A stretch of 64,000 bases of DNA, taken from Amphiscolops sp. MND2022 (taxonomy: Eukaryota). The stretch is from contig OZ076421.1 in NCBI GenBank assembly GCA_964187785.1, positions 26,660,001 to 26,724,000 on the forward strand, read 5' to 3'. Position numbers and translations under genes: made by a program. The notes under the pieces were generated by a model. The model ran no database searches. It was not told the DNA's origin and saw only the letters and a list, made by a program, of their open reading frames with translations. This document shows, in pieces, positions 17,390-42,438 of the stretch (within the stretch, counting starts at the first letter, position 1; the number at the start of each line of letters is the position of its first letter).

Positions 17390-17581
17390 TGTTTCAACTT
17401 CAGAGTATGAAAATTTAGTATCGTAATAAGACTGTATTTCATCTCTGATCAATCTGTACTAAGATTAGTGAATAAGAATATTAGCGTAGTATGGTAAAAT
17501 GTTAACACGTACTTGAGACTAACTATATAAATAGGATACAGTCTCATAATAGTTTGTCCTCTAACTTCTTCTTTTTCTCCA
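17390..17581 (-). repeat. Gypsy 5' LTR
   Basis: TGTTTC...CTCCA is homologous to 11301-11480 with a small insertion. Confidence 0.9.
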
Positions 17582-17779
17582 ATGGGGGTACTGTTTTATG
17601 AGCATAACTCTGGCTTTTATCTTCAAAGCCAGCATAATGCTGATTTATTTTGTTGGGTTTTTGAATGAACGATGTATGATCATCACTAGCGAAAGGAAAA
17701 CGTTTAACATTGAACATTTAAAACAACGACATAATTAAAAACGCGCGTTGATACCAATGTATCTAATCATGCAAAAATC

Positions 17780-20280: not shown

Positions 20281-20313
20281 CCCCTATATTCACTATGTTC
20301 CCCTATGTTCCCT

Positions 20314-20408
20314 AGTCAGCTATGTTCACATACTCCTAGTATCCTAAAAGGAGCGAAGCGGAGCGACGTGCCATATGGCCTTGCCTCAATGTTGCTACTT
20401 GGCGAAGA
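20314..20408. repeat. Fragment of the 10540/42060 MITE family
   Basis: AGTCAGCTATG..GAGCGAAGCG..GCCTCAATGTTGCTACTTGGCGAAG is shared with about 42208-42310. Confidence 0.7.
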
Positions 20409-20440
20409 GATCGAAGCCATTCAACAAATATGATAAGTGT

Positions 20441-20536
20441 TTTTTCGGACTTGTGCAACCGAAATTTATTTTCGGACTTGTGCAACCCAAATTTATTTTC
20501 GGACTTGTGCAACCTAAATTTATTTTTGGACTTGTG
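20441..20536. repeat. 27-bp minisatellite, about 3.5 copies
   Basis: TTTTCGGACTTGTGCAACCNAAATTTA is tandemly repeated. Confidence 0.9.
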
Positions 20537-22576
20537 AATAGCCGCCTGAACATTGATACCACATTAAGTGTTCCGTTCCCGAATATCTCTGTCAATTTTA
20601 TGAGAGTGGCGAACAACTGTTGTGTCTTGCCTTTCATTCACAAAAAGTAACGAAAAAAAGCTACATATCTTGAATCGCTGGTAGTATCTTGACTGCCTAC
20701 GTTTAGCAAAGTTAATGTCACTAATGAATCATCCTTGGGTGTTTCTGTGTGATATTATTCTGCGCTTTCTTTTCGGCCTCATGCTATCGAAGTAAAAGGA
20801 ACAATTAACATTTCGTGGTATGACTGGAGTAGCACACGACAGCGTGATACTACGCTACATAGGACGAAATGTATTAAATGTCGAGAAACCTCACAGACGT
20901 TAGCAAACAGCGGATAAAGAGAGCTATTCGCTATTCGGAATCACACGATTTATAAAAATTTAAAAAAATCAAAGATAAACGCCTGGGATTTCAGTAAATT
21001 CAGTTTGTAGGGCCATGTTGAATACTTTAATAGCTTTGATGCAGGTCCTTCTTTGCGGATTGGTTACCAAAATGACCTCGATATTTAATATTACAAGGTC
21101 ACCCCTCATTGCTGAAAAAAAAACAAATAAACTCAATGAATTGCAACACTAGTCTTAGGACATAAATGAAAACTAGTAAAAGAACATGACAACTATTTCG
21201 AAAATTAAAAACAGTCTCTTCCATCGTCCCCAATTCACGTCTAGACGTTGGATTGAAACTCACATCGTTCCCACCGTATAAAACTACCACGCGCTTTTAG
21301 AGCAGTATTTGGAATCTCCTGTGGCGTTCCAAGAGATTAGTCGTTGTTAGCCTTCCGCCACCACGTATGATGCAGTCGTTTTCAAAGAGAAAAGTTCTGA
21401 TAAGCGCCTCACATGGCTGTCTCCAATAATTGGAGTAGTTATAATCCTAACAGGTGGACCAGATAAATTACATCGAAAGTTGAATGTTACCACCATAAAT
21501 GCAAAGACGGAAACTTCTCTTCGTGTGTATGTGTGATTTCGCAAATTTGAGTTTTAATAAACAGACGTGTTGATCGACAGTCAAACCCTACTTAAAGAAG
21601 CGAGTGAATGTACTTATGATCTCATGATCGTGACGACTTTTGCAAGTTACCTGCCCAAAACGTTCGCAGTGTCGACAGAACGGTCTCGAAAATCAATAAT
21701 CACAAAATTTAAACAAGTTCATAATAAACCTTAGATAGCGCCGAAAAAAGTTGGTTGTAAAGTATGGAAATCTAATAAAATAAAGTTGGTATAAGGTGTA
21801 TATATTTTCTCGAGACTTTTGTTACATGAAATTCCCAGAAAAACTTTTTTCGGGTCTTGATGTTATAAATCAATGGTAAAACATCACTTCAACTAACAAT
21901 CTAATTTACAACGTAAATCAGATAAAGTTCAAAGATTACCCAATGTTATGTGTAACGCAAAAACCAAGTAGAAAAAATCAATTCGATCATGTAAGGTGAG
22001 AAATAAACAAGGCAACTATTGAGACAGAGGAGATTTGGCAAAACACCTGAATGAATTGAAAGATTCAATAACTAAAGCAAATGCAGGCTGGTTTTAGAGG
22101 TGATTAGTTGCATAAATCGTCAATACCTTTCTCCATTGACATGCATGCCGTCAGTATCAGCGTGCCTGTTGAGGGAAATCTGTGGAAAAGACATAACATA
22201 ACCATTGTAAAAAATATACAACGTTGAAAAGTAGCAGACTACTTGTGTTACCGCTGCGTTTAAGCCCGGCTATTAAAATGTGACAAGGCAAAAACCAAAG
22301 CAATTGTTTCAAAACGATTCGGAAGATGTTATAAACAAATGAGAAGGCAAGTATAACAAATGACCCTCAACTATGATAATCCCCTATCTTACCTTTGAGC
22401 CCAAGATCAAGACTGCGCCTGGGATTTCTACAAAATCAGTTCGTAGGGCCATGTTGAATCCTTTAATACACTATGGTACCAGAAAGCTACGTACACCTGT
22501 TGAATTTTTAAAAACTGAGAGGAAAATTTGAAATTTAAACAGAAAAAAAATATAATCAAATTAGGAGACAAACACA

Positions 22577-24483
22577 CTAATAACCAATCATATTTCCATC
22601 GTTTTTTATAGTTTTTACGAGGCGACTCTCATAAGATGCGTACATATTTCGGATAATTTCGGGACTGATATTGTTCCAAATATCAATCACTGTTTCTTCC
22701 AAATTTTCCCACGTTAGAGTTTGTCCTTGCAGGGATTTCTTCAGTATAGCCCAAATATTTTCCATGGGGTTCAAATCAGGACTATACGGAGGCCATTCGA
22801 GCACATCCCACTTCTTTTCACTTAGATAGTTGGAAACCTCTCTGCTTCTGTGAATTGGGGCATTATCGTGCTGGAAAACAATGTCCGGTAGGTGCAAATT
22901 TCTGTCATACTTTTCAAGAATTTCGACATAGCCGCTGCTGTTGAGTGTTGCCGGGCATCTAATTAGCATCTTCCTGCCATCCGATCGAATAGCTCCCCAG
23001 AACATAAGCGAGCGTTTATCAGTGTTCTGCCCTTGAATATTTTTTGAGTGGAAACGCGATCCTTTTTCTCGGAAAACTCTTACAATACCGTCACTGTTCA
23101 GACGCACACGAGTTTCATCAGTGAAAACCACATTTTCCCAGAATCCTTTTCCATCCAGCCAAGATTATTATGTAAAACTTCATGAGAAAAAGAATAGCAA
23201 AAGTAGAGTACTACAAAAATCTGCGATAATAAAAAACAAAAGAAAAAGTCAGAAAAAGTTGAAACACTTTGTCGATAAATTTGAGGCTTAAGCAGGTCAC
23301 CGACTTACGCTGTTCCCCGATTGTTTACGGTTCTTAGTCGGCGCTTATATCAAAAAGTGCCCGACTATTACAATGACATTTATTTTTTTAGTCGCCGCTT
23401 TTAACTGTTCGAATTCAAGTAGATTTGGCGCAGCCGGTTGAATTCTCACTTTTGACACCAAAGATTGTGGGTTCCACCCCAGGGCTGTCCCGTGTTTTTA
23501 GACGATTTCGCAAACAGAAGAAAAGGGTCACCCTGTGAATTTTTTTCGGCCCTGTGAAACAAAAAAAATGAAATATTCGAAAAATCGAAATTTTGAAAAA
23601 AATTCCAAAATTCATGCATGGATTTTGTTTCAGTTCAAGGCCGTAATTGGAAGGTTTCAAAAATAAAAGAATGCATTCTTATTGTGAAATGTTGTGAAAA
23701 AAATTGGGAAAATTTCGAAGATTTTTTTCGAAAATTTCGATTTTTTTTCTAAATTTTTGATTTTTTTGTCTCACAGTGCTGAAAAATTTCGAAGGGAGAC
23801 CCTTTGGTGTTGAGAAAAAATTGTCTCACAGTGCCGAAAAGTTTGTAGGAGGGGCCGTTTGGTGTTGCGATAAAAAAATTAGGAAAATTCCGAAACTTTG
23901 AGATTTTCTTCGAAAATTTCCGATTTTTTTGCTGAAAATTTTCGTCTATTTGCGGACTCTGTGTATGACTCTGTGTATGATTTTCCTTCCCAAAATTGAA
24001 AATTTTTTACTATGTACTTTTTTCAGTGAGTGCAAGGCTGGACAAAAAACCGAGCGGCTTCTTGGACATTCGCAAGCACCATTTTTTCCTCGTTGTTCGT
24101 TGTTTTTTATTGAGCTGAAATTTTTTAGCCGCCACTCTAGAAACTAGCCCATACTTCTTCAGAACTCGCCGAATTGTAGATCTTGAGACACTTTTTGAGG
24201 TTGCAAAAGAATTATACTTTACCCTGATTCTTTGTAATGTAGTTTTGGGATCGTTTTTGACGCTTCTTATAATTAATCTTTTGTCTTTTTTGCTAAGTTT
24301 TTCCGGTCTTCCTGGTGGTTTTTTTGGAGAATAAGAACTGGTTTTCAAAAAGCGCTTGTAAGCTGACTGTGCTGTTGATCGTGACTTCAAACCCAATTTC
24401 TCTTTGATTTGATTGTAAGATAACCCAATCTCGCGAAGAGTAACAATTTTGCAAACCAAAAATGAATCAAGCGGTTTAACCAT
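22577..24483 (-). CDS. Tc1-family DD34E transposase, split by a 905-nt insert (parts 24051-24483 and 22577-23145)
   Basis: N-terminal HTH with GRPEKL. C-terminal VFTDE...HDN-x-WPPYSPDLNPME with exactly 34 residues between the second D and E. Joining the two parts gives 333 aa without stops. Confidence 0.9.
23146..24050. mobile_element. Composite non-autonomous insert within the Tc1 ORF
   Basis: Imperfect terminal inverted repeats (TTTTTTGTCCAGCC vs TTTTCCATCCAGCC). Contains a HINE-family terminus near 23335-23380, a tRNA-like A/B-box pair (23426-23480) and GGGAGACCCTTT/CACAGTGCCGAAAA body motifs. Confidence 0.7.
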
Positions 24484-24757
24484 TTTCGAAGCACAACTTC
24501 CGGTAACTGATTGAAATTGTTCACAAATGTTTTCATTTTTTTTTGACTTGAAAAAAATTCAAAAAATTCAGCTGTACTTAGCTTTTTGGTACCATAGTGT
24601 AGCTTGGATGCAGGTCCTACTTTAAGGACTGGTTACCAAAATGACCTCGATGCCTAAAATTACAAGTTCACCCCTCATTGGTACCAAAAACCAAATAAAC
24701 TCAATGAATTGCAACATTAGTTTTAGGACATAAATGAAAACTAGTAAAAGAACATTA

Positions 24758-25266
24758 TCAACTAAATCGAAAATTGAAAACAGTCTCTTCCATCGTCCTC
24801 AATACACTTCTGGACTTTGGATTGAAACTAGCATCGCTCCCTCCGGAGAGCATCATTTGGAATCACCTGTGGCTTTCCAAGAGATTGTTCATTGTTAGCC
24901 CTCCTGCACCACGTTTGATGTAGTCGTCGTCAAAGAAAAAAGTTCTGATAAGCGCCTCACATGGCTGTCTCCAATAATGAGAGTAGTCATAATCCTAAAC
25001 TGTGAACAAGATAAACTACCTCGCAAGTTGAAGGTCACCTCCATAAATGCAAACACCAAGGTAAAATTCTCTTTGTCTGTATGTGATTTCGCAAATTTGA
25101 GTTTTAATAAACAGATGTGTTGATCGACAGTCAAACCCTACTTAAAGAAGCGAGGGAATGTACTTATGATCTCATGATCGTGAAGACTTTTGCAAGATAC
25201 CTGCCCAAAACGTTCGCAGTTTCGACAGAACAGTCTCGAAAATCAATAATCACAAAATTTAAACAT
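24758..25266 (-). pseudogene. 5' exons of one array-unit gene (Cys/His motif plus SGNH block I)
   Basis: Exon 1 25201-25266 (MFKFCDY*FSRLFCRNCERFGQ), 63-nt intron, exon 2 25039-25137 (GLTVDQHICLL...FME), 39-nt intron, then exon 3 from 24999 with MTTLIIGDSH (GDSH at 24961-24972). Both introns are GT-AG and phase 0. Confidence 0.65.
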
Positions 25267-27106
25267 CTTCATAATAAACCTTAGATAGCGTTGAAAAAAC
25301 TTGGTTGTAAAATATGGAAATCTAATTAAATAAAGTTGGTATAATATGTATATATATTTGCGAGACTTTTGATACAAGAAACTCCCAGAAAAGTTTTTTT
25401 TTCGGTTCGTTGATGTTATAAATCAATGGTAGAACATCAATTCAACTAACAATCTAATTTACAACGTAAGTCAGATAAGGTTCAAAGAATACCCAATGTT
25501 ATTTATAACGCGAAAACCAAGTAGACAAAATCTATTCGATCCTGTAAGGTGAGAAATAAACAAAGCAATCATTGAGACAGAGAATTGGCAAAACACCTGA
25601 ATGAATTAAAAGATTCAATGACTAAGGAAAATGCAGGCTGGTTGTGAAGGTGATTAGTTGCATAAATCGTCAACACCCTTCTCCATTGACATGCAAGCCG
25701 TCAGTATCAGCGTGCTTGTTGAAGGAAATCTGTGGAAAAGACATAGCATAACTTTTGTAAAAATTATACAACGTTTAGAGGTAGCAGACTACTTGTGTTA
25801 TCGCTGCGTTTAATCCCGGCTAATAAAATGTGACAAAGCAAAAACCAAAGCGATTGTTTCAAAATGATTCGAAAGATGTCAAAAACAAATCAGAAGTCGA
25901 GTATAACAAATGACCCTCAACTATGATAATCCCCTATCTTACCTTTGAGCCCAAAACCAATACTACGCCTGGGATTTCTACAAAATCAGTTCGTAGGGCC
26001 ATGTTGAATCCTTTAATGGCTTTGATGCAGGTCCTTCTTTGCAGACTGGTTACCAAAATGACCTCGATGCCTAAATTTACAAGTTCACCCCTCATTCCTT
26101 ACAAAAACCAAATAAACTCAACGAATTGCAACACTAGTCTTAAAACATAAATGAAAACTAGTAAAGGAACATTATCAACTAACTCGAAAAATAAAAACAG
26201 TCTCTTCCACCGTCCTCAATACACCTCTGGACTTTGAATTGAAACTAGCTTCGTTCTCTCCGAATGAAACTACCACGCGCTCTGAGAGCATCAATTGGAA
26301 TCTCCTGTGGCGTTCCAAGAGATTAGTCGTTGTTAGCCCTTCTGCACCACATATGATGCATTCGTCGTCAAAGAAAACAAATCTGATAAGAACCTCACAT
26401 GGCTGTCTCCAATAATTAGAGTAGTCATAATCCTAACCTGTGAACAAGATAACCTACCTTGCAAGTTGAAGGTTACATCCATAAATGCAAATATCAAGGG
26501 AAACTTCTCTTTGCGTGTATGTGATTTCGCAAATTTGAGTTTTAATAAACAGACGTGTTAATCGACAGTCAAACCCTACTTAAAAAAGCGAGTGAAAGTA
26601 CTTATGATCTGATGATCCTGAAGACTTTTGCAAGTTACCTGCCCAAAAGGTTCGCAGTTTCGAATAAACAGTCTCGAAAATCAAAAATCACAAAATTTAC
26701 ACATGTTCATATTAAACCTAGATAGCGTTGAAAAAACTTGGTTGTAAAGTATGGAAATCTAATTTAAAAAATTTGGTATAAAATTTATTTATTTTCTCGA
26801 GACTTTTGATACATGAAATCCTCAGGAAAGTTTTTTTTCGGTTCGTTGATGTTATAAATCAATGGTAAAACATCAGTTCAACTAACAATCTATTTTACAA
26901 CGTAAACCAGATAAGGTTCAAAGAATACAAAATGTTTTGTATAACACAAAAACCAAGTAGAAAAAATCTATTCGATCCTGTAAGAAGAGAATTAAACCAA
27001 GCAACTATTGAGACAGCGAATTGGCAAAACACCTGAATGAAAAAAAAAGATTCAATAACTAAAGAAAATGCAGCCTGGTTTTAGAGGTGATTAGTTGCAC
27101 AAATCG

Positions 27107-27875
27107 TCAACACCCTTCTCCATTGACATGCATGCCGTCAGTATCAGCGTGCTTGTTGAGGGAAATCTGTGGAAAAGACAAAACATAATCATTGTGAAAA
27201 TTATACAATGTTGAAAGGTAGCGGACTACTTCTGTTACCGTTGCGTTTAAGACCGGCTATTAAAATGTGACAAAGCAAAAACCAAAGCGATTGTTTCAAA
27301 ACGATTCGGAAGATGTTATAAACAAATCAGAAGGCGAGTATAACAAATGACCCTCAACTATGATAATCCCTATCTTACCTTTGAGCCCAAAATCAAGACT
27401 GCGCCTGGGATTTCTACAAAATCAGTTCGTAGGGACATGTTGAATCCTTTAATAGCTTTGATGCAGGTCCTTCTTTGCGGACTGGTTACCAAAATGACCT
27501 CGATGCCTAAAATTACAAGTTCACCCCTCATTGCTACCAAAAACCAAATAAACTCAACGAATTGCAACACTAGTCTTATGACATAAATGGAAACTAGTAA
27601 AAAAAACATTATCAACTTACTCGAAAAATAAAAGCAGTCTCTTCTACCGTCCTCAATACACGTCTGGACTTTAGATTGAAACTAGCATCGTTCCCTCTGC
27701 ATAAAACTACAAGGCGCTCTGTGATCTGAGAGCATCATTTGGAATCTCCTGTGGCGTTCCAAGAGATTAGTCGTTGTTAGCCCTCCTGCACCACGTATGA
27801 TGCAGTCGTCGTCAAAGAAAACAAATCTGATAAGAACCTCACTTGGCTGTCTCCAATAATTAGAGTAGTCATAAT
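27107..27875 (-). pseudogene. 3' exons of one array-unit SGNH/GDSL hydrolase gene
   Basis: Exon 3 ends at 27617, then an 83-nt intron, exon 4 27379-27533 (MRGELVILGIEVILVTSPQRR...GSK), a 212-nt intron, and exon 5 from 27166 (ISLNKHADTDGMHVNGEG; block V DGMH at 27128-27139). Block III CGGNDA is intact in other copies, e.g. 33449-33466. Confidence 0.75.
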
Positions 27876-30800
27876 CCTAACCTGTGAACAAGATAACCTA
27901 CCTTGCAAGTTGAAGGTTACATCCATAAATGCAAATATCAAGGGAATTTTCTCTTTGCGTGTATGTGATTTCGCAAATTTGAGTTTTAATAAACAGACGT
28001 GTTGATCGACAGTCAAACCCTACTTAAAAAAGCGAGTGAAAGTACTTATGTTCTGATGATCCTGAAGTTTTTTGCAAGTTACCTGCCCAAAAGGTTCGCA
28101 GTTTCGAATAAACAGTCTCGAAAATCAAAAATCACAAAATTTACACATGTTCATATTAAACCTAGATAGCGTTGAAAAAACTTGGTTGTAAAGTATGGAA
28201 ATCTAATTTAAAAAATTTGGTATAAAATTTATATATTTTCTCGAGACTTTTGATACATGAAATCCTCAGAAAAGTTTTTTTTCGGTTCGTTGATGTTATA
28301 AATCAATGGTAAAACATCAGTTCAACTAACAATCTAATTTACAACGTAAACCAGATAAGGTTCAAAGAATACAAAATGTTTTGTATAACGCAAAAACCAA
28401 GTAGAAAAAGTCTATTCGATCCTGTAAGGTGAGAATTAAACCAAGCAACTATTGAGACAGAGAATTGGCAAAACACCTGAATGAAAAAAAAACTCAATAA
28501 CTAAAGAAAATGCAGCCTGGTTTTAGAGGTGATTAGTTGCACAAATCGTCAACACCCTTCTCCATTGACATGCATGCCGTCAGTATCAGCGTGCTTGTTG
28601 AGGGAAATCTGTGGAAAAGACAAAACATAATCATTGTAAAAATTATACAATGTTGAAAGGTAGCAGACTACTTGTGTTACCGCTGCGTTTAAGACCGGCT
28701 ATTAAAATGTGACAAAGCAAAAACCAAAGCAATTGTTTCAAAACGATTCGGAAGATGTTATAAACAAATCAGAAGGCGAGTATAACAAATGACCCTCAAC
28801 TATGATAATCCCCTATCTTACCTTTGAGCCCAAAATCAAGACTGCGCCTGGGATTTCTACAAAATCAGTTCGTAGGGCCATGTTGAACCCTTTAAAAGCT
28901 TTGATGCAGGTCCTTCTTTGCGGACTGGTTACCAAAATGACCTCGATGCCTAAAATTACAAGTTCACCCCTCATTGCTACCAAAAACCAAATAAACTCAA
29001 CGAATTGCAACGCTAGTCTTATGACATAAATGGAAACTAGTAAAAAACATTATCAACTAACTCGAAAAATAAAAGCAGTCTCTTCTACCGTCTTCAATAC
29101 ACGTCTGGACTTTAGATTGAAACTAGCATCGTTCCCTATGCATAAAACTACAAGGCGCTCTGTGGTCTGAGAGCATCATTTGGAATCTCTTGTGGCGTTC
29201 CAAAAGATTAGTCGTTGTTAGCCCTCCTGCACCACGTATGATGTAGTCTTCGTCAAAGAAAAAAGTTCTGATAAGCGCCTCACATGGCTGCCTCCAATAA
29301 TTAGAGTTGTCATAATCCTAACCTGTGAACAAGATAAACTACCTCGCAAGTTGAAGGTTAGAGCCTTAAATGCAAATATCAAGGGAAAGTTCTCTTTGTC
29401 TGTATGTGATTTCACAAATTTGAGTTTTAATAAACAGACGTGTTGATCGACAGTCAAACCCTATTAAAGAAGCGAGTCAAAGTACTTATGATCTGATGAT
29501 CGTGAAGACTTTTGCAAGTTACCTGCTCAAAACGTTCGCAGTGTCGACAGAACAGTTTCGAAAATCAATAATCACAAATTTTAAACATGTTCATAAAAAA
29601 CCTTAGATAGCGTTGAAAAAACTTGGTTGTAACATATGGAAATCTAATTTAAAAAAGTTGGTATATTATGTATATTTATTCTCAAGACTTTTGATACATG
29701 AATTTCCCAGAAAAGCTTTTTCGTTTCGTTGATGTTATATTTCAATGGTAAAACATCACTTCGATTGACAATCTAATTTACAACGTAAGTCAGATAAGGT
29801 TCAAAGAATACCCAATGATATGTACAACGCAAAAACCAAGTAGAAAAAATCTATTCGATCATGTAAGGTGAGAATTAAACAAAGCAACTATTGACACAGA
29901 GGAGAATTGGCAAAACACCTGAATGAATTGGAAGATTCAATAAGTAAAGCAAATGCAGGCTGGTTTTAGAGGTGATTAGTTGCATAAATCATCAATGCCC
30001 TTCTCCATTGGAATGCATGCCGTCAGTATCAGCGTGCTTGTTGAGGGAAATCTGTGGAAAAGACAAAACATAATCATTGTAAGAATTATACAATGTTGAA
30101 AGGTAGCAGACTACTTGTGTTACCGCCGCCTTTAAGACCGGCTATTAAATTGTGACAAAGCAAAAACCAAAGCGATTGTTTCAAAACGATTCGGAAGATG
30201 TTATAAACAAATCAGAAGGCGAGTATAACAAATGACCCTCAACTATGATCATCCCCTATCTTACCTTTGAGCCCAAAATCAAGACTGCGCCTGGGATTTC
30301 AACAAAATCAGTTCGTAGGGCCATGTTGAATCCTTTAATAGCTTGGATGCAGGTCCTTTTTTAGGGACTGGTTACCAAAATGACCTCGATGCCTAAAATT
30401 ACAAGTTCACCCCTCATTGCTACCAAAAACCAAATAAACTCAACGAATTGCAACACTAGTCATAGGACATAAATGAAAACTAGTAAAAGAACTTTATCAA
30501 CTAACTCGAAAATTAAAAACAGTCTCTTCTACCGCCCTCAATACACGTCTGGACTTTAAATTGAAACTAGCATCGTTCCCTCTGCATAAAACTACAAGGC
30601 GCTCTGTGATCTGAGAGCATCATTTGGAATCTCCTGTGGCGTCCCAAGAGATTAGTCGTTGTTAGCCCTCCTGCACCACGTATGATGTAGTCTTCGTCAA
30701 AGAAAAAAGTTCTGATAAGCGCCTCACATGGCTGCCTCCAATAATTAGAGTAGTCATAATCCTAACCTGTGAACAAGATAAACTACCTCGCAAGTTGAAG

Positions 30801-33800
30801 GTTAGAGCCTTAAATGCAAATATCAAGGGAAACTTCTCGTTGTCTGTATGTGATTTCACAACTTTGAGTTTTAATAAACAGACGTGTTGATCGACAGTCA
30901 AACCCTATTAAAGAAGCGAGTGAAAGTACTTATGATCTGATGATCGTGAAGACTTTTGCAAGTTACCTGCTCAAAACGTTCGCAGTGTCGACAGAACAGT
31001 TTCGAAAATCAATAATCACAAATTTTACACATGTTCATAAAAAACCTTAGATAGCGTTGAAAAAACTTGGTTGTAAAATATGGAAATCTAATTAAATAAA
31101 GTTGGTATATTATGTATATATATTCTCAAGACTTTTGATACATGAAATTCCCAGAAAAGCTTTTTCGTTTCGTTGATATTATATTTCAATGGTTAAACAT
31201 CACTTCGATTGACAATCTAATTTACAACGTAAGTCAGATAAGGTTCAAAGAATAGCCATTGATGTGTACAACGCAAAAACCAAGTAGAAAAAATCTATTC
31301 GATCATGTAAGGTGAGAATTAAACAAAGCAACTATTGACACAGAGGAGAATTGGCAAAACACCTGAATGAATTAAAAGATTCAATTACTAAAGAAAATGC
31401 AGGCTGGTTTTGAAGGTGATTAGTTGCATAAATCGTCACTACCCTTCTCCATTGACATGCAAGCGTCAGTATCAGCGTGCTTGTTGAGGGAAATCTGTGG
31501 AAAAGACATAACATAACCATTGTAAAAGTTTTACATTGTTGAAAGGTAGCAGACTACTTGTGTTACCGCTGCGTTTAAGCCCGGCTAATAAAATGGGACA
31601 AAGCAAAAACAAAAGCGATTGTTTCAAAACGATTGGAAAGATGTTATAATTGAATCACAAGGCGAGTAAAACAAATGACGCTCAACTATGATAATCCCTT
31701 ATCTTACCTTTGAGCCCAAGATCAAGACTGCGCCTGGGATTTCTACAAAATCAGTTCATTGGGCCATGTTGAATCCTTTAATAGCTTGAATGCAGGTCCT
31801 TCTTTAAGGACTGGTTACCAAAATGACCTCGATGCCTAAAATTACAAGTTCACCCCTCATTGCTACCAAAAACCAAATAAACTCAACGAATTGCAACACT
31901 AGTCTTAGGACATAAATAAAAACTAGTAAAAAAACATTTTCAACTAACCCGAAAAATAAAAGCAGTCTCTTCTACCGTCCTCAATACACGTATGGACTTC
32001 AGATTGAAACTAGCACTGTTCCATCGGCATAAAACTACAAGGCGCTCTGAGAGCATCAGTTTAAATCTCCTGTGGCGTTCCAAGAGATTAGTCGTTGTTA
32101 GCCCTCCTGCAACACGTACGATGTAGTCGTCGTCAAAGACAAAAGTTCTGATAAGCGCCTCACAGGGCGGCCTCCAATAATTAGAGTAGTCACAATCCCA
32201 ACCTGTGAACAAGATAAACTACCTCGCAAGTTGAAGGTTAGAGCCATAGTGCAAATATCAAAGGAAACTTCTCTTTGTTTGTATGTGATTTCACAAATTT
32301 GAGTTTTATTAAACAGACGTGTTGATCGACAGTCAAACCGTACTTAAAGAAGCGAGTGAAAGTACTTATGATCTGATGATCGTGAAGACTTTTGCAAGTT
32401 ACCTGCCCAAAACGTTCGCAGTGTCGACAGAACAGTTTCGAAAATCAATAATCACAAATTTTAAACATGTTAATAATAAACCTTAAATAGCGTTTAAAAA
32501 GTTGGTTGTAAAATATGGAAATCTAATTAAATAAAGTTGGTATAATATGTATATATTTTTTCAAGACTTTTGATACATGAAATTCCCAGAAAAGTTTTTT
32601 CGTTTCGTTGTTGTTAAATTACAATGGTAAAACATCACTTCGATTGACAATCTAATTTACAACGTAAATCAGATAAGGTTCAAAGTATACCCAATGATAT
32701 GTATATCGCAAAAACCAAGTAGAAAAAATCTATTCGATCATGTAAGGTGAGAATTAAACAAAGCAACTATTGACACAGAGGAGAATTGGCAAAATACCTG
32801 AATGAATTAAAAGATTCAATAAGTAAAGCAAATGCAGGCTGGTTTTAGAGGTAATAAATTGCATAAATCATCAATACCCTTCTCCATTGGAATGCATGCC
32901 GTCAGTATCAGCGTGCTTGTTGAGGGAAATCTGTGGAAAAGACATAACATAACCATTGTAAAAATTATACATAGTTGAAAGGTAGCAGACTACTTGTGTT
33001 ACCACTGCGTTTAGGCCCGGCTATTAAAATGTGACAAAGCAAAAACAAAAACGATTGTTTCAAAACGATTCGAAAGATGTTATAAACTTCTCAGAAGGCG
33101 AGTATAACAAATGACCCTCAACAATGATAATCCCCTATCTTACCTTTGAGCCCAAAAATCAAGACTGCGCCTGGGGTTTCTGCAAAATCAGTTCGTAGGG
33201 CCATGTTGAATCCTTTAAGTGCTTCGATGCAGGTCCTTCTTTGCGGACTGGTTACCAAAATGACCTCGATGCCTAAAATTACAAGTTCACCCCTCATTGC
33301 TAACAAAAACCAAATAAACTCAACGAATTGCAACACTAGTTTTGGGACATGAATGAAAACTATTAAAAAAACATTATCAATTAACTCGAAAAACAAAAGC
33401 AGTCTCTTCCACCGTCCTCAAAACACGTCTGGACTTTGGATTGAAACTGGCATCGTTCCCTCCGCATAAAACTACCACGCGCTCTGAGAGCATCATTTGG
33501 AATCTCCTGTGGCGTTCCAAGAGATTAGTCTTTGTTAGCCCTCCTGCACCACCTATGATGTAGTCGTCGTCAAAGAAAGAAGTTCTGATAAGCGCCTCAC
33601 ATGGGTGTCTCCGATAATAAGTGTAGTCATAATCCTAACCTGTGAACAAGATAAATTACCTCGAAAGTTGAAGGTTACCTCCATCAATGCAAGTATCAAG
33701 GAAAACTTCTCTTTGTGTGTAAGTAATTTCGCAAATTTGAGTTTTAATAAACAGATGTGTTGCGCGACAGTCAAACCATACTTAAAGAAGCGAGTGAAAG

Positions 33801-36800
33801 TACTTATGATCTGATGATCGTGAAGACTTTTGCAAGTTACCTGCCCAAATGTTCGCAGTTTCGACAGAACAGTCCCGAAAATCATTAATCACAAATTTTA
33901 AACATGTTCATAAAAAACCTTAGATAGCGTTGAAAAACTTGGTTGTAAAATATGGAAGTCTACCTGAATAAAGTTGGTATTTTGTGTATATTTTTTACCG
34001 AGTCATTTGATACATGAAATTCCCGGAATTTTTTTTTCGGTTCGTTGATGTTATATATCAATGGTAAAACATCACTTCAACTAACAATCTAATTTACAAC
34101 GTAAATCAGATAAGGTTCAAAGAATACCCAATGTTACTTATAACGCAAAAACCAAGTAGAAAAAATCTATTTGATCATGTAAGGTGAGAATTAAACAAAG
34201 CAACTATTGAGACAGAAGAGAATTGGAAAAACACCTGAATGAATTAAAAGATTCAATAAGTAAAGCAACTGCACGCTGGTTTTAGAGGTAATAAATTGCA
34301 TAAATCATCAATACCCTTCTCCATTGGAATGCATGCCGTCAGTATCAGCGTGCTTGTTGAGGGAAATCTGTGGAAAAGACATAACATAACCATTGTAAAA
34401 ATTATACATAGTTGAAAGGTAGCAGACTACTTGTGTTACCACTGCGTTTAGGCCCGGCTATTAAAATGTGACAAAGCAAAAACAAAAACGATTGTTTCAA
34501 AACGATTCGAAAGATGTTATAAACTTCTCAGAAGGCGAGTATAACAAATGACCCTCAACTATGATAATCCCCTATCTTACCTTTGAGCCCAAAAATCAAG
34601 ACTGCGCCTGGGGTTTCTGCAAAATCAGTTCGTAGGGCCATGTTGAATCCTTTAAGTGCTTCGATGCAGGTCCTTCTTTGCGGACTGGTTACCAAAATGA
34701 CCTCGATGCCTAAAATTACAAGTTCACCCCTCATTGCTAACAAAAACCAAATAAACTCAACGAATTGCAACATTAGTCTTAAGACATAAATGAAAACTAG
34801 TAAAAGAACATTATCAACTAACTCGAAAAAAAATGCAGTCTCTTCCACCGTCCTCAAAACACGTCTGGACATTGGATTGAAACTGGCATCGTTCCCTCCG
34901 CATAAAATACCACGCGCTCTGAGAGCATCATTTGGAATCTCCTGTGGCGTTCCAAGAGATTAGTCTTTGTTAGCCCTCCTGCACCACCTATGATGTAGTC
35001 GTCGTCAAAGAAAGAAGTTCTGATAAGTGCCTCACATGGGTGTCTCCGATAATTAGAGTTGTCATAATCCTAACCTACGAACAAGATAAATTACCTCGAA
35101 AGTTTAAGGTTACCTCCATGAATACAAATATCAAGGAAAACTTCTCTTTGTTTGTATGTGATTTCACAAATTTGAGTTTTAATAAACAGACGTGTTGATC
35201 GACAGTCGAACCCTACTTAAAGAAGCGAGTGAAAGTACTTATGATCTGATGATCGTGAAGACTTTTGCGAGTTACGTGCCCAAAACGTTCGCAGTGTCGA
35301 CAGAACAGTTTCGAAAATCAATAATCACAAATTTTACACATGTTCATAATAAACCTTAAATAGCGTTGAAAAAACTTGGTTGTAAAATATGGAAATCTAA
35401 TTAAATAAAGTTGGTATAATATGTATTTATATTTTCAAGACTTTTGATACATGAAATTCCCAGAAAAGTTTTTTCGTTTCGTTGATGTTATATTTCAATG
35501 GTAAAACATCACTTCGATTGACAATCTAATTTACAACGTAAATCAGATAAGGTTCAAAGAATACCCAGTGATATGTATAACGCAAAAACCAAGTAGAAAA
35601 ATCTATTTGATCATGTAAGGTGAGAATAAAACAAAGCAACTATTGACACAGAGGAGAATTGGCAAAATACCTGAATAAATTAAAAGATTCAAAAGGTAAA
35701 GCAAATGCAGGCTGGTTTTAGAGGTGATTAGTTGCATAAATCATCAATACCCTTCTCCATTGGAATGCATGCCGTCAGTATCAGCGTGCTTGTTGAGAGA
35801 AATCTGTGGAAAAGACAAAACATAACCATTGTAAAAATTATACAATGTTGAAAGGTAGCAGACTACTTGTGTTACCGTTGGGTTTAAGACCGGCTATTAA
35901 AATGTGACAAAGCAAAAACCAAAGCGATTGTTTCAAAACGATTCGGAAGATGTTATAAACAAATCAGAAGGCGAGTATAACAAATGTCCCTCAACTATGA
36001 TAATCCCCTATCTTACAATTGAGCCCAAAATCAAGACTGCGCCTGGGATTTCTACAAAATCAATTCGTAGGGCCATGTTGAATCCTTTAATAGCTTTGAA
36101 GCAGGTCCTTCTTTGCCGACTGGTTACCAAAATGACCTCGATGCCTAAAATTACAAGTTTACCCCTCATTGCTACCAAAAACCAAATAAACTCAACGAAT
36201 TGCAACACTAGTTTTGGGACATGAATGAAAACTATTAAAAAAACATTATCAATTAACTCGAAAAATAAAAGCAGTCTCTTCCACCGTCCTCAAAACACGT
36301 CTGGACTTTGGATTGAAACTGGCATTGTTCCCTCCGCATAAAACTACCACGCGCTCTGAGAGCATCATTTGGAATCTCCTGTGGCGTTCCAAGAGATTAG
36401 TCTTTGTTAGCCCTCCTGCACCACCTATGATGTAGTCGTCGTCAAAGAAAGAAGTTCTGATAAGCGCCTCACATGGGTGTCTCCGATAATTAGAGTAGTC
36501 ATAATCCTAACATGTGAACAAGATAAATTACCTCGAGAGTTGAAGGTTACCTCCATAAATGCAAATATCAAGGAAAACTTCTCTTTGTGTGTATGTAACT
36601 TCGCAAATTTGAGTTTTAATAAACAGATGTGTTGAGCGACAGTCAAACCCTACTTAAAGAAGCGAGGGAAAGTACTTATGATCTGATGATCGTGAAGACT
36701 TTTGCAAGTTACCTGCCCAAAACGTTCGCAGTTTCGACAGAACAGTCCCGAAAATCATTAATCACAAATTTTAAACATGTTCATAATAAACCTTAGATAG

Positions 36801-39800
36801 CGTTGAAAAACTTGGTTGTAAAATATGGAAGTCTACTTAAATAAAGTTGGTATTTTGTGTATATTTTTTCCCGAGTCTTTTGATACATGAAATTCCCGGA
36901 AATTTTTTTTTCGGTTCGTTGATGTTATATATCAATGGTAAAACATCACTTCAACTAACAATCTAATTTACAACGTAAATCAGATAAGGTTCAAAGAATA
37001 CCCAATGTTACTTATAACGCAAAAACCAAGTAGAAAAAATCTATTTGATCATGTAAGGTGAGAATTAAACAAAGTAGCTATTGAGACAGAAGAGAATTGG
37101 AAAAACACCTGAATGAATTAAAAGATTCAATAAGTAAAGCAACTGCACGCTGGTTTTAGAGGTGATTAGTTGCCTAAATCTTCAATACCCTTCTCCATTG
37201 ACATCCATGCCGTCAGTATCAGCGTGCTTGTTGAGGGAAATCTGTGGAAGAGACATAACATAACCATTGTAAAATATTTACAATGTTGAAATGTAGCAGA
37301 CTACTTGCGTTACCGCTGCGTTTAAGCCCGGCTAATAAAATGCGAGAAAGCAAAAACAAAAGCAATTGTTTCAAAACGATTCGAAAGATGTTATAAACAA
37401 ATCAGAGGGCGAGTATAACAAATGACCCTCAACTATGATAACCCCTATCTTACCTTTGAGCCCAAGATCAACACTGCGCCTGAGATTTCTACAAAATCAG
37501 TTCGTAGGGCCATGTTGAATCCTTTAATAGCTTTGATGCAGGTTCTTCTTTGCGGACTGGTTATAAAAATGACCTCGATGCCTAAAATTACGAGTTCGCC
37601 CCTTATTGCTACCAAAAACCAAATAAACTCAACGAATTGCAACACTAGTCTTTGGACATAAATGAAAACTAGTAAAAGAACTTTATCAACTAACTCGAAA
37701 ATTAAAAACAGTCTCCTCCGCCGTCCTCAATACACGCCTGGACTTTGGTTTGAAACTAGCATCGTTCCCTCCGCATAAAACTACCACACGCTCTTAGAGC
37801 ATCAGTTGAAATCTCCTGTGGCGTTCCAAGAGATTAGTTGTTGTAAGCCCTCCTGCACCACATAAGATGCAGTCGTCAAAGAGAAACGTTCAGATAAGCA
37901 CCTCACATAGCTCTCTCTAATAATTAGAGTAGTCATAATCCTAACATGTGAACCAGATAAACTACCTCGCAAGTTGAAGGTTACCTCCATAAATTCAAAT
38001 ATCAAGGGAAACTTCTCTTGGTGTGTATGTGATTCCGCAATATTGAGTTTCAATAAAAAGACGTGTTGATCGACAGTCAAACCCTACTTAAAGAAGCGAG
38101 TGAAATTACTTATGATTTGATGATCGTGAAGACTTTTGCAAGTTACCTGCCCAAAACGTTCGCAGTTTCGACAGAACAGTCTCGAAATTCAATAATCACA
38201 AAGTTTAAACATGTTCATAATAAACCTTAGATAGCGTTGAAAAAACTTGGTTGTAAAATATGGAAATCTGAATAAATAAAACTGGTCTATCGTGTATATA
38301 TTTTCTGGAGACTTTTGATACATGAAATTCCCAGAAAAATTTTTTTCGGTTCGTGGATGTTGTATATCAATGGTGAAACATCACTTCAACTAACAATCTG
38401 ATTTACAACGCAAATCATATAAGGTTCAAAGAATACCCAATGTTATGTATAACGCAGAAACCAAGTAGAAAAAAATCAATTCGATCATGTAAGGTGAGAA
38501 ATAAAGAAAGCAATCATTGAGTCAGAGAATTGGCAAAACACCTGAATGAATTAAAAGATTCAATTACTAAAGAAAATGCAGGCTGGTTTTGAAGGTGATT
38601 AGTTGCATAAATCGTCAATACCCTTCTCCATTGACATGCAAGCCGTCAGTATCAGCGTGCTTGTTGAGGGAAATCTGTGGAAAAGACATAACATAACCAT
38701 TGTAAAAATTTTACAACGTTGAAAGGTAGCAGACTACTTGTGTTACCGCTGCGTTTAAGCCCGGCTAATAAAATGGGACAAAGCAAAAACAAAAGCGATT
38801 GTTTCAAAACGATTGGAAAGATGTTATGATTAAATCAGAATGCGAGTAAAACAAATGACACTCAACTATGATAATCCCTTATCTTACCTTTGAGCCCAAG
38901 ATCAAGACTGCGCATGGGATTACTACAAAATCAGTTCGTAGGGCCATGTTGAATCCTTTAATAGCTTTGATGCAGGTCCTTCTTTGCGGACTGGTTATCA
39001 AAATGACCTCGATGCCTAAAATTACAAGTTCACCCTCATTGCTGCCGAAAACCAAATAAACTCAACGAATTGCAACACTAGTCTTAGGACATAAATGAAA
39101 ACTAACATATGAACATTTTCAACTAACTCGAAATTAAAAACAGGTTCTTCCACCGTCCTCAATACTTAGCAGGACTTTGGATTGAAACTAGCATCGTTCC
39201 TTCCGCATAAAACTACCACGCGCTCTGAGAGCATCATTTGGAATCTCCTGTGGCGTTCCAAGAGATTAGTTGTTGTAAGCCCTCCTGCACCACGTATGAT
39301 GTAGTTGTCTTCAAAGAAAATGTTCTGATAAGCGCCTCACATGGCTGTCTTCAAAAATTAGAGTAGTCATAATCCTAACTTGTGAACAAGATAAACTACA
39401 TCGCAAGTTGAAGGTTTCCTCCATAAATGCAAATATCAAGGCAATCTTCTCTTTGTGTGTATGTGATTTCGCAAATTTGAGTGTTAATAAAGAGACGTGT
39501 TGATCGACAGTCAAACCCTACTTAAAGAAGCGAGTGAAAGTACTTATGATCTGATGATTGTGAAGACTTTTGCAAGTTACCTGCCCAAAACGTTCGCAGT
39601 TTCAACAGAACAGTCTCGAAAGTCAATAATCACAAAATTTAAACATGTTCATAATAAACCTCAGATAGCGTTGAAAAAACTTGGTTGTAAAATATGGAAA
39701 TTTAATTAAATAAAGTTGGTTTAATGTGCATATATTTTCTCGAAACTTTTGATACTTGAAATTCCCAGAAAAGTTTTTTTTTCGATTAGTTGATGCTATA

Positions 39801-42059
39801 AATCAATGGTAAAACATCACTTCAACTAACAATCTAATTTACAACGTAAATCAGATAAAGTTCAAAGAATACCCAATGATATGTAAAACGCAAAAAGCAA
39901 GTAGAAAAAATCTATTCGATCATGTAAGGTGAGAACTAAACAAAGCAACTATTGAGACAAGAGAACTGGCAAAACACCTGAACGAATTAAAAGATTCAAT
40001 AACTGAAGCCGATGGCTGGTTTTAGAGCCGATTAGTTGCATAAATCGTCAATACCCTTCTCCATTGACATGCATACCGTCAGTATCAGCGTGCTTGCTGA
40101 AGGAAATCTGTGGAAAAGACATAACATAACCATTGTAAAAATAATACAACGTTGAAAGGTAGCAGACTACTTGTGTTACCGCTGTGTTTAAGCCCGGCTA
40201 TCAAAATGTGACAAAGCAAAAACAAAAACGATTGTTTCAAAACGGTTCGAAAGATGTTATATACAAATCAGAAGGCGAGTATAACAAAGGCCCCTCAACT
40301 ATGATAATCCCCTATCTTACCTTTGAGCCCAAGATCAAGACTGCGCCTAGGATTTCTGCAAAATCAGTTCGTAGGGCCATGTTGAATCCTTTAATAGCTT
40401 TGATCCAGGTCCTTCTTTGCGGACTGGTTATAAAAATGACCTCGATGCCTAAAATTACGAGTTCGCCCCTTATTGCTACCAAAAACCAAATAAACTCAAC
40501 GAATTGCAACACTAGTCTTTGGACATAAATGAAAACTAGTAAAAGAACTTTATCAACTAACTCGAAAATTAAAAACAGTCTCCTCCGCCGTCCTCAATAC
40601 ACGCCTGGACTTTGGTTTGAAACTAGCATCGTTCCCTCCGCATAAAACTACCACACGCTCTTAGAGCATCAGTTGAAATCTCCTGTGGCGTTCCAAGAGA
40701 TTAGTTGTTGTAAGCCCTCCTGCACCACATAAGATGCAGTCGTCAAAGAGAAACGTTCAGATAAGCACCTCACATAGCTCTCTCCAATAATTAGAATAGT
40801 CATAATCCTAACACGTGAACCAGATAAATTACTTCGCAAGTTGAAGGTTACCAGCATTAATGCAAAGATCAAGGGATACTTCTCTTTGTGTGTGTGTGTG
40901 ATTTCGCAACTTTGAATGTTAATAAAGAGACGTGGTATTCTACTGTCAAATCCTACTAAAACAAGCAAGTGAAAGTACTTATGATCTGATATTCATCCAA
41001 GATTTTTGCAAGTTACTTGCGCTAAACTTTCGCAGCTTTGACAAAATTGTCTCAGAAATCATCGAACACTAACTTTTAAAAAGTTCATAATAGATCTTAG
41101 ACAGCCTTGAAAAGAATTGGTTCTAAAAAATGGATCTTTAATTCCATAAACTGTATATAATGGGTATTCGTTTTCTCGAGACTTTTGATACATGAAATTC
41201 CCAGAAATTGTTTTTCGATTCGTTGATGCTATAAATCAATGGTAAAACATCACTTCAACGAACAATCTAAGTTACAACGTAAATCCGATAAGATTCAAAC
41301 ATTACCCAATATTATGTTTACGGAAGACCAAGTAGAAAAAACTCGATTCGATGATGTGATGTAAGGTGAGAACCAAACCAAGCAACTATTGAGAGAGAGG
41401 AGAATTGACAAAACACCTCAATGAAGTAAAAGACTCAATAACTAAAGCAAATGCAGGCTGGTTTTGGGGTGATTAGTTGCATAAATCGTCACTACCCTTC
41501 TCCATTGACATGCATGCCGTCAGTATCAGCGTGCTTGTTGAGGGAAATCTGTGGAAAAGACATAACATAACCAATATAATAATTATACAACGTTGAAAGG
41601 TAACGGACTAATTGTGTTACAGCTGCGTTGAAAACCGGCTATTAGAATGTGACTAAGCTAAAACAGAAGATATAATTTCCAGACGATTCGAAAGATGTTA
41701 TGATTAACAGATCAGAAGGCGAGTATAACAATCGACCCTCAACAATGACAGCCCCTATCTTACTTATGACCCCAAGCTCAAGACTGCCCCTGGGGTTTCA
41801 GCAAATTCAGTTTGGTGGGCCATGTTGAATCCTTTAATAGCTTGGATGCAGGTCCTTTTTTAAGGACTGGTTACCAAAATGACCTCGATGCCTAAAATTA
41901 CAAGTTCACCCCTCATTGCTACCAAAAACCAAATGAGCCCAAAGAAATGCAACACTAGTCTTATGATTAAAACAATAGTCTATAGGTATCAGTTCCAGAG
42001 ATGTAAGTGAATCCAATTTAAAGAGTAAAATTGGTATGTCTAATGTAATTGTAGTTAAA

Positions 42060-42438
42060 GGCGGCCGAATAAATTCATTCTCAGCGCGTGATAAAATCCA
42101 TTCTGAACGCGCGATTAAATTCATTCTCAAATTTGATTGTACAAATACATAATCCAAATAATAGTACATGTAAACAAAATAGCGTCAATCGAACATTACG
42201 ATAACGTAGTCAGCTATGGTCACATACCTCTAGGGCCCTAAATGCAGGAGCGAAGCGAAATGGAGCGACTTGCCATATGGCCCTGCCTCAATGTTGCTAC
42301 TTGGCGAAGGGAGCGAAGCAACCGAGCCATACAACATATATGCTAACCTCTTCAAAGAAATCAATTCATTTATTGAATTTACTTGGTCGGCTTAGTGAAC
42401 CGTCGGTTTAGTCAACCGTCGGCTTGGTGCACCGCCCC
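42060..42438. mobile_element. Second copy of the MITE, opposite orientation to 10540-10966
   Basis: Reverse complement of about 10545-10940, ending TCGGCTTGGTGCACCGCCCC. The other TIR is truncated. Confidence 0.75.

What the first reader, a model, noticed from the sequence alone, without database searches (positions are those of the whole stretch)
20980..41965. A 1.44-kb macrosatellite whose repeat unit is a whole spliced SGNH/GDSL hydrolase gene
The array looks like satellite DNA and the ORF track shows only fragments, but the minus strand of each unit reads as one five-exon gene of about 210-225 aa. Seen: block I IIGDSH, block II GAGG, block III CGGND and block V DGMHVNGEG in the canonical order, joined by four phase-consistent GT-AG introns (63, 39, ~83 and ~212 nt). 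The gene plus a spacer of about 330 bp fills the unit. Established: these blocks define SGNH hydrolases (Ser nucleophile, Gly/Asn oxyanion hole, Asp-His). SGNH esterases also occur in ORF1 of some CR1/L2/RTEX LINEs, but those lack introns. Inference: this is either an amplified esterase gene cluster or a satellite born from a gene, possibly cargo of a larger mobile element.
Basis: partly seen in the sequence, partly recalled or inferred. Interest (0 to 1): 0.85.

Follow-up and report, generated by a model that had tools for sequence, protein, structure and literature searches.

The report
Dead esterase gene amplified beside Helitron
A 21-kb block of 13 head-to-tail repeats is real, but each repeat is a broken copy of a small three-exon esterase-like gene that travels with a Helitron-type jumping gene, while intact copies of that gene sit elsewhere in the same genome.

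Summary
The array is confirmed: window 20980-41965, 13.1 units of about 1437 bp, 88-96% alike, split by a Tc1/mariner insertion at 22468-24600.

The SGNH motifs (GDS, GxGG, GGND, DGxH) lie on the minus strand in the canonical order. The five-exon model is wrong. Two paralogues in the same assembly (L001, L002) read as intact three-exon genes of 171 aa. Their introns are 77-79 nt (phase 1) and 218 nt (phase 0), and they evolve under constraint (dN/dS 0.35; exons 4% diverged, introns 13%).

Against them, every array unit shares three defects: a +2 nt frameshift between blocks I and II, a -1 nt shift before the first donor, and a TGA just after block V. Units drift near-neutrally (dN/dS 0.69). 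Eight of 11 carry private frameshifts and most have lost catalytic residues. The array is therefore an amplified pseudogene.

Context: in L002 the gene lies 3.3 kb upstream, on the same strand, of an ORF over 2067 aa long with Helitron Rep-like and PIF1 helicase matches. In the window the array abuts a decayed homologue of that ORF (18660-20776).

The scan had already noted an SGNH + Rep + PIF1 element elsewhere in this genome.

The SGNH assignment rests on motifs and sub-threshold matches. No RNA data were available.

The parts
20980..41965 (-). Macrosatellite of 13.1 units of about 1437 bp. Each unit is a pseudogene copy of a three-exon SGNH-like gene plus about 640 bp of its 3' flank. On the minus strand the array starts inside intron 1 (41965) and ends inside exon 2 (20980).
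   Evidence: unit identities 88-96%
35250..36710 (-). Reference unit u9. It holds the ATG at about 36501, block I (36490-36470), block II (36425-36411) and block III (36338-36324). Intron 1 runs 36257-36172, exon 2 runs 36171-36017, intron 2 runs 36016-35804, and block V is at 35776-35765. A shared TGA stop lies two codons after NGEG. The spacer runs from about 35745 to 35250.
36440..36452 (-). Shared +2 nt insertion relative to L001/L002, in a GACGACGAC run between blocks I and II. It is present in all full units, and it stops translation from the ATG after about 31-44 codons.
   Evidence: alignment A1 columns 130-131; ORF translations
22468..24600 (-). Tc1/mariner element inserted into the array. 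It has 33-nt terminal inverted repeats and HTH_Tnp_Tc3_2 and DDE_3 transposase pieces.
18660..20776 (-). Decayed homologue of the first about 575 residues of the Helitron-type Rep/helicase ORF of L002 (31-58% aa identity). It is broken into several frames and truncated after residue 575.
   Evidence: tblastn; short ORFs in different frames
20547..20949 (-). Sequence homologous to the region just upstream of and into the Rep/helicase ORF start in L002 (L002 13585-14267, 69-75% identity). It directly adjoins the last, truncated array unit.
   Evidence: blastn

Best explanation
The array is a tandemly amplified pseudogene. Its founder was a diverged paralogue of a small three-exon SGNH/GDSL-like esterase gene of 171 aa. 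In this genome that gene sits just upstream, on the same strand, of the Rep/PIF1-helicase gene of a Helitron-like transposon.

Shown: the founder's lineage was under coding constraint for most of its history. The copy that was amplified already carried two frameshifts and a premature stop, because all units share them. A segment of about 1.44 kb (the gene from about 25 nt upstream of its ATG, plus its 3' flank) was multiplied head to tail to at least 13 copies. Since then the copies have drifted almost neutrally, picked up private frameshifts and stops, lost catalytic residues, and been hit by a Tc1 element. The neighbouring Rep/helicase gene is decayed and truncated.

Inferred: the array makes no esterase. 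At most it gives a peptide of 31-44 residues. It is a by-product of a dead transposon copy. Amplification was by unequal crossing-over or replication slippage, possibly seeded by the element's rolling-circle replication. A second locus (L001) carries a 1.9-kb macrosatellite made from a Rep/helicase fragment of the same element family, which suggests that these elements are prone to internal tandem amplification. The intact paralogues in L001 and L002 probably encode a working accessory esterase of the element.
For: Array anatomy.

Same genome: L003, fetched from ENA ERZ25074608, is 100% identical to window 24070-37609. L001 and L002 come from that same assembly with similar coverage labels.

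Intact three-exon genes in L001 and L002: they have canonical splice sites and all four SGNH blocks. L001 versus L002 gives dN/dS 0.35. Exon divergence is 22/516 against 39/295 in introns, Fisher p = 6e-6.

Founder history: the array majority versus L001/L002 gives dS 0.65-0.68 and dN/dS 0.24-0.29.

Decay in the array: among units dN/dS is 0.69. Diversity is equal in exon-like and spacer parts, with no third-position excess. Eight of 11 units have private frameshifts and every unit has 1-4 stops. Block I reads GGS, GGR, GDT, RES, EDS or GES in 9 of 11 units. The shared +2, -1 and TGA lesions are. No GT-AG intron can bridge blocks I and II.

Helitron link: the L002 ORF of more than 2067 aa matches Helitron_like_N at E 5.9e-5 and PIF1 at E 2.7e-5, and PIF1 helicase structures at E 1.6e-7. 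Its homologue lies directly beside the array in the window, and a fragment of it sits in every unit of the L001 1.9-kb array.

SGNH call.
Against: No profile match reaches a curated threshold: Lipase_GDSL_2 scores 16.6 bits against a cut-off of 32.9, and Helitron_like_N scores 23.8 against 28.9.

The full-length spliced protein could not be submitted to Pfam or a fold predictor, so the SGNH fold is not demonstrated. AlphaFold on exon 1 alone gave pLDDT 44.

An exhaustive phmmer search with a block III to exon 2 query found no annotated relative anywhere.

No RNA data were found. The four runs behave like DNA, with even depth and no joints, so splicing of the intact genes and silence of the array are both inferred.

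Helitron termini were not identified, so whether the SGNH-like gene lies inside the mobile unit rests on repeated linkage at three loci, not on defined ends.

The upstream (right) edge of the array is not flanked by element sequence.
Confidence: 0.75

Rival explanations
1. Functional gene cluster: each unit is a working, spliced five-exon SGNH esterase gene, amplified for dosage.
For: All four motif blocks occur in order in most units. The splice signals of the two real introns are retained.
Against: No in-frame GT-AG join exists between blocks I and II. The intact paralogues read that stretch as continuous exon, so removing it would delete about 20 residues between the nucleophile block and the oxyanion glycine. 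All units share frameshifts and a stop, and 8 of 11 have private frameshifts. The nucleophile motif is mutated in 9 of 11 units. There is no codon-position signal.
Confidence: 0.03
2. Host gene family: the SGNH-like genes are ordinary cellular genes. One copy was tandemly duplicated and decayed, and the adjacency to Helitron-like genes reflects gene capture or insertion nearby, not an integral accessory gene.
For: The gene has two spliceosomal introns and its own stop 3.3 kb before the Rep/helicase ATG. Fish texim genes are thought to be host genes captured by Helitrons (PMC4021074). No element termini were defined here.
Against: Three separately diverged loci show the same order and strand: the SGNH-like gene, then Rep/helicase-derived sequence. 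The window gene is about 73% identical to L002 at the nucleotide level, and L001 versus L002 is 86-89%. The two components have diverged by comparable amounts between the window and L002: 72-73% nt for the gene, 69-80% nt for the Rep 5' region.
Confidence: 0.15
3. LINE-derived: the units derive from the ORF1 esterase of a CR1, L2 or RTEX-type non-LTR retrotransposon.
For: The protein is compact, with GDS at the extreme N-terminus. SGNH esterases are known as ORF1 in those clades (PMC3905857).
Against: Two introns are conserved in L001, L002 and the array. No reverse transcriptase lies next to any of the three loci; the neighbour is a Rep/PIF1 ORF. A PDB sequence search with exon 1 found nothing at E up to 10, in a database that should hold the retrotransposon esterase solved in PMC3905857.
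Confidence: 0.03
4. The array is kept for a non-coding role, for example as a small-RNA source against the Helitron-like family or as a chromatin or structural satellite.
For: It is a long array of transposon-derived sequence in one orientation. A second transposon-derived macrosatellite exists at L001.
Against: No region of the unit is markedly conserved. Diversity is 0.04-0.16 throughout. No expression data exist.
Confidence: 0.05

Closest known systems
texim / teximY SGNH hydrolase genes associated with Helitrons in bony fish (Tomaszkiewicz et al. 2014, PMC4021074)
   Same: A multicopy, intron-containing SGNH hydrolase gene lies a few kb upstream of a Helitron coding region. Copies have multiplied in the genome, and the enzyme's function is unknown.
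   Different: Platyfish teximY genes have 15 exons and lie 80-280 kb apart, not in a 1.44-kb head-to-tail array. That paper found no Helitron association outside bony fish. Sequence relatedness to Texim was not tested here. The array copies here are dead.
Satellite-like central repeats carried by non-autonomous Helentrons (Cg_HINE) in the Pacific oyster (PMC7492417)
   Same: Tandem repeats are embedded in, and probably propagated with, rolling-circle transposons.
   Different: Those are described as satellite-DNA-like central repeats, with no gene content mentioned in the abstract read here. Here the unit is 1.44 kb and is a whole pseudogene, and in L001 it is a 1.9-kb piece of the Rep/helicase gene.
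Gene-containing macrosatellites (from my own knowledge, not checked here: human D4Z4/DUX4, RS447/USP17, CT47)
   Same: Kilobase-scale units, each holding an entire small gene or pseudogene, arrayed head to tail.
   Different: Those units mostly hold intact ORFs and are not transposon cargo. Here every unit is broken.
SGNH/GDSL esterases as accessory ORFs of retroelements (CR1/L2/RTEX ORF1, PMC3905857; bdelloid Vesta LTR elements and Athena, PMC5408684)
   Same: An SGNH-type esterase is recruited as an accessory gene of a mobile element.
   Different: Those are intronless ORFs of retroelements. This one has two introns and accompanies a rolling-circle DNA transposon.

Membership tests
SGNH/GDSL hydrolase superfamily | Block I GDS(x) with the nucleophile Ser near the N-terminus | tested here: met
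   IIGDS is at residues 5-9 of the 171-aa L001 and L002 proteins. Among array units, only 2 of 11 keep GDS.
SGNH/GDSL hydrolase superfamily | Block II Gly, block III GxND and block V DxxH in this order with typical spacing | tested here: met
   GVGG is at 27-30, GGND at 55-58, and DSIH or DGIH at 143-146.
SGNH/GDSL hydrolase superfamily | Significant profile match (Pfam gathering score) | tested here: not met
   Lipase_GDSL_2 is the top hit, but at 15.7-16.6 bits against a cut-off of 32.9, on exon 1 alone. Exons 2 and 3 gave no hit. The spliced protein has no reference and was not submitted.
SGNH/GDSL hydrolase superfamily | Three-layer alpha/beta/alpha fold | tested here: inconclusive
   AlphaFold on exon 1 alone gave pLDDT 43.6. 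Language-model features place exon 1 among GDSL/SGNH clusters for 99 of 100 named neighbours, with a top score of 0.89.
Macrosatellite | Head-to-tail units of 1 kb or more in many copies | tested here: met
   13.1 units of 1433-1444 bp.
Helitron / Helentron (context of the array) | One large ORF with a Rep (HUH) domain followed by a PIF1-type helicase | tested here: met
   In L002 13989-20189, Helitron_like_N matches residues 1043-1146 (E 5.9e-5) and PIF1 matches 1768-1907 (E 2.7e-5). Both are just under Pfam's cut-offs. PIF1 structures match at E 1.6e-7. The window copy keeps only residues 2-575, decayed.
Helitron / Helentron (context of the array) | Defined termini and 3' hairpin, with insertion without target duplication | not tested
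   Too few copies were in hand to define the ends.
CR1/L2/RTEX ORF1 esterase | Intronless ORF1 directly upstream of an APE/RT ORF2 | tested here: not met
   Two conserved introns are present. The downstream neighbour is a Rep/PIF1 ORF, not a reverse transcriptase.
texim genes | SGNH gene physically linked to a Helitron coding region | tested here: met
   compare PMC4021074.
texim genes | Sequence membership in the Texim clade | not tested
   No Texim sequence was available by reference.

The most novel reading that the evidence does not exclude
The 171-aa intron-containing SGNH-like esterase is a genuine, selected accessory gene of a Helitron-like family in an animal outside the bony fishes. 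If so, the esterase-Helitron partnership seen for fish texim is ancient or recurrent and functionally meaningful. The same family would also repeatedly turn its own internal segments into kilobase macrosatellites: the esterase gene here, a helicase fragment in L001.
Probability: 0.35. Interest if true: 0.6.

Novelty: new variant of a known kind. Interest (0 to 1): 0.4.

Why it matters
The array itself is a dead by-product and has little functional interest. Its value is as a pointer to three things.

First, it exposes a small SGNH-like esterase gene under purifying selection, with no annotated relative found in a search of 1.8 billion representative proteins, that sits beside the Rep/helicase gene of a Helitron-like transposon. 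A comparable esterase-Helitron link was described in fish (texim) and was not found in the invertebrate deuterostomes examined there. Its meaning is an open question: transposition factor, or captured host gene.

Second, two loci show kilobase-unit macrosatellites made from internal pieces of the same element family. That extends the known link between rolling-circle transposons and satellite birth from short non-coding monomers to whole-gene units.

Third, for annotation, the array should be masked as a transposon-derived pseudogene satellite and not called as 13 esterase genes.

Tried and rejected
- Pfam and NCBIfam on single array pieces and on single exons gave only sub-threshold hits or none.
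- ESM Atlas on two array pieces was uninformative, with low recognition.
- PDB sequence searches with array piece B and with L001 exon 1 gave nothing relevant.
- The exhaustive phmmer search with the 134-aa u8 ORF returned only the window's own copy, one paralogue ORF (P0003) and a spurious low-complexity repeat protein.
- Word-based searches with L001 exon 1 and with P0003 found only proteins of the same assembly.
- AlphaFold on exon 1 alone gave pLDDT 44 and was not used for a fold search.
- I fetched E. coli TesA and 112 close homologues to build an SGNH profile. Both hmmsearch against 2000 shuffles and hhalign showed no signal, because the profile is too narrow.
- Read laying on one unit: the four runs that hold the unit have even depth over exon-like and spacer parts and show no joints, so they behave as DNA and say nothing about splicing. 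Depth could not be calibrated to a copy number.
- The 380-bp repeat at the right edge of the array is absent from L001 and L002. It is therefore an unrelated interspersed repeat, not an element terminus.
- The full-length spliced 171-aa protein has no reference, so I did not submit it to Pfam, structure prediction or fold search.
Full report
**1. Observation**

Direct-repeat analysis finds 13 copies in register, with start-to-start spacing of 1433-1444 bp. One spacing of about 3550 bp marks an insertion. Full units are 88-96% identical, and the edge unit u13 is more diverged.

The insertion at 22468-24600 is a Tc1/mariner element. It has 33-nt terminal inverted repeats and transposase pieces matching HTH_Tnp_Tc3_2 (E 1e-13) and DDE_3 (E 2e-20). 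Without it the array is 18.85 kb, or 13.1 units.

On the minus strand the motifs IIGDSH, G(G)AGG, CGGND and DGMH recur once per unit in that order.

**2. Gene structure**

In a reference unit the four blocks lie in three different reading frames. I enumerated every GT...AG pair that could join neighbouring pieces in frame without stops.
- Between blocks I and II there is none.
- Between the end of the exon 2 part and block V there is an excellent intron: GTAAGA...TTTTCCACAG, 213 nt.

An exhaustive phmmer search with the longest natural ORF of the array (u8, 134 aa) found only the window's own copy, a spurious repeat protein, and an 84-aa ORF, P0003, at 59% identity.

P0003 lies on contig L001 of ENA assembly ERZ25074608. 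A further ORF, P0004, led to L002 in the same assembly. The window's own ORF P0001 led to L003. L003 is 100% identical to window 24070-37609. So L001 and L002 are other loci of the same genome.

L001 and L002 each hold one copy of the unit, at 72-74% nucleotide identity. In both, the gene is intact:
- Exon 1 runs from the ATG through blocks I, II and III in a single frame.
- Intron 1 is 77-79 nt, with GTAAGT or GTTAGT at the donor, TTAG at the acceptor, and phase 1.
- Exon 2 follows, then intron 2 of 218 nt (GTAAGA...CACAG, phase 0).
- Exon 3 carries block V and a C-terminal helix-like tail.
- The protein is 171 aa, with GDS at 7-9, GVGG at 27-30, GGND at 55-58 and D(S/G)IH at 143-146.

The real structure is therefore three exons. 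The 63-nt and 39-nt 'introns' were devices to step over frameshifts.

**3. The intact paralogues are constrained; the array is not**

*L001 versus L002.* dN/dS is 0.35. There are 22 differences in 516 exon positions against 39 in 295 intron positions, Fisher p = 6e-6.

*Array majority versus L001/L002.* dS is 0.65-0.68 and dN/dS is 0.24-0.29. The founder of the array was therefore a long-diverged paralogue that was still under coding constraint for most of that time.

*Shared lesions.* Against L001 and L002, every unit shares three defects:
- a +2 nt insertion between blocks I and II;
- a 1-nt deletion just before the first donor, which puts the donor in the wrong phase;
- a TGA two codons after NGEG.

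Translation from the ATG stops after 31-44 codons.

*Among units.*
- Nucleotide diversity is the same in exon-like parts (0.06-0.12) as in spacer and intron parts (0.08-0.10), with no third-position excess.
- Summed dN/dS is 0.69.
- Eight of 11 full units have private frameshifting indels, and each has 1-4 stops in the L001 codon register.
- Block I reads GDS in only two units. Elsewhere it reads GGS, GGR, GDT, RES, EDS or GES.

The array is an amplified pseudogene. The lesions predate the amplification, or were spread through it by homogenisation.

**4. Is it SGNH?**

Pfam's Lipase_GDSL_2 is the top hit for exon 1 of L001 (E 0.021) and of L002 (E 0.012), and for array piece B (E 0.26). In each case it aligns to the matching part of the profile, but far below the gathering score.

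Language-model features of L002 exon 1 place it among GDSL/SGNH clusters for 99 of the 100 nearest named clusters. The best score is 0.89, against a eukaryotic cluster.

Motif order and spacing fit the superfamily. I regard the assignment as likely but not proven. The spliced protein has no reference, so I could not submit it to Pfam or to structure prediction. Exon 1 alone folded poorly, and a TesA-based profile was too narrow to be informative.

**5. Context**

In L002 the gene is followed, 3.3 kb downstream on the same strand, by an uninterrupted ORF of more than 2067 aa that runs off the locus. It matches Helitron_like_N at residues 1043-1146 (E 5.9e-5) and PIF1 at 1768-1907 (E 2.7e-5). 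It also matches solved PIF1 helicases at E 1.6e-7. This is the Rep/helicase architecture of Helitron-type rolling-circle transposons.

In the window, the sequence directly after the last, truncated array unit (20949-20547) is homologous to the region around that ORF's start. Window 20776-18660 encodes a decayed, multi-frame homologue of its residues 2-575, after which homology stops.

In L001 the gene is flanked by a different macrosatellite of 1.77-1.9-kb units. Each of those units contains a homologue of Rep/helicase residues 1561-1665 on the same strand.

So three diverged loci show the same order and strand: the SGNH-like gene, then Rep/helicase-derived sequence. This favours the gene being part of the element. 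Element termini were not defined, however, and capture of a host gene remains possible.

Other first-stage notes on this genome report an 'SGNH + Rep + PIF1 + GIY-YIG' element on another piece (s1-172848), and SGNH-like extra genes in several other transposon classes. These are unchecked leads. My L002 result independently agrees with the first three components.

**6. Mechanism**

The unit corresponds collinearly to L001 9686-10504 plus 11120-11602. That is the gene from about 25 nt upstream of its ATG, plus part of its 3' flank.

The array begins inside intron 1 and ends inside exon 2, as expected for a satellite whose edges have been eroded.

Whether amplification was by unequal exchange or was seeded by rolling-circle replication cannot be decided from the sequence. 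Pairs of units two apart (u7/u9 at 96%, u8/u10 at 93%, u10/u12 at 92%) are as similar as, or more similar than, neighbours. This hints at duplication of two-unit blocks.

**7. Expression**

The only runs that hold the unit behave as DNA: depth is even over exon-like and spacer parts, and there are no joints. No statement about transcription can be made.

**8. Comparison and verdict**

The closest described case is fish texim/teximY: multicopy SGNH hydrolase genes linked to Helitrons (PMC4021074). Helentron-borne satellite-like repeats in oyster (PMC7492417) and SGNH esterases as accessory ORFs of retroelements (PMC3905857; PMC5408684) are further relatives in kind.

This case differs in three ways:
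- it is a head-to-tail kilobase array of whole pseudogene units;
- the gene is small and has only three exons;
- it involves an apparently different host lineage.

The macrosatellite of gene-sized units with SGNH motifs is real, but the units are dead copies of a three-exon transposon-linked gene. The interest lies in the intact paralogues and their Helitron link, not in the array.

Noticed in passing
L002:13989-20189: An uninterrupted ORF of more than 2067 aa, running off the locus, with Helitron Rep-like and PIF1 helicase matches. It looks like an intact Rep/helicase gene of a Helitron-like element, 3.3 kb downstream of an intact SGNH-like gene.
   Followed up: partly
L001:2010-7159 and 11786-18000: A second macrosatellite of 1.77-1.9-kb units lies on both sides of the SGNH-like gene. 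Each unit holds a homologue of Rep/helicase residues 1561-1665. L001 4900-5907 recurs at 19244-20255, which suggests a higher-order repeat of about 14.3 kb.
   Followed up: partly
window 22468-24600: A Tc1/mariner element with 33-nt inverted terminal repeats. Its transposase is split into an HTH part (24010-24483) and a DDE part (22577-23131) by about 880 nt of other sequence.
   Followed up: partly
window 42058-42437, 10574-10936, 20313-20436: A 380-bp interspersed repeat sits about 90 bp beyond the right edge of the array. An inverted copy (86% identical) lies at 10.6-10.9 kb beside a 16-mer tandem repeat (10545-10623). A 140-bp fragment lies near the left edge. It is absent from L001 and L002.
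   Followed up: partly
window 53740-57382 (+) and 59920-63798 (-): Two decayed BEL/Pao LTR-retrotransposon remnants, with Peptidase_A17, rve, Integrase_H2C2 and DUF5641 matches in broken ORFs.
   Followed up: no
window 49589-50137 and 9688-10538: Fragments about 71% identical to L002 7227-7785 and 8945-9258, which are parts of the 4.6-kb segment shared by L001 and L002 upstream of the SGNH-like gene. They lie on the opposite strand to the array, so they are not collinear with it.
   Followed up: no
window 12000-18000: A stretch with strong AT skew (-0.24 to -0.33). Its one ORF of 230 aa (16161-16853, minus) has no Pfam match. It lies just beyond the point where Rep/helicase homology ends.
   Followed up: no
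window 20442-20536: A 27-nt tandem repeat (3.5 copies, 95% matches) lies inside the region homologous to the upstream and start region of the Rep/helicase ORF.
   Followed up: no
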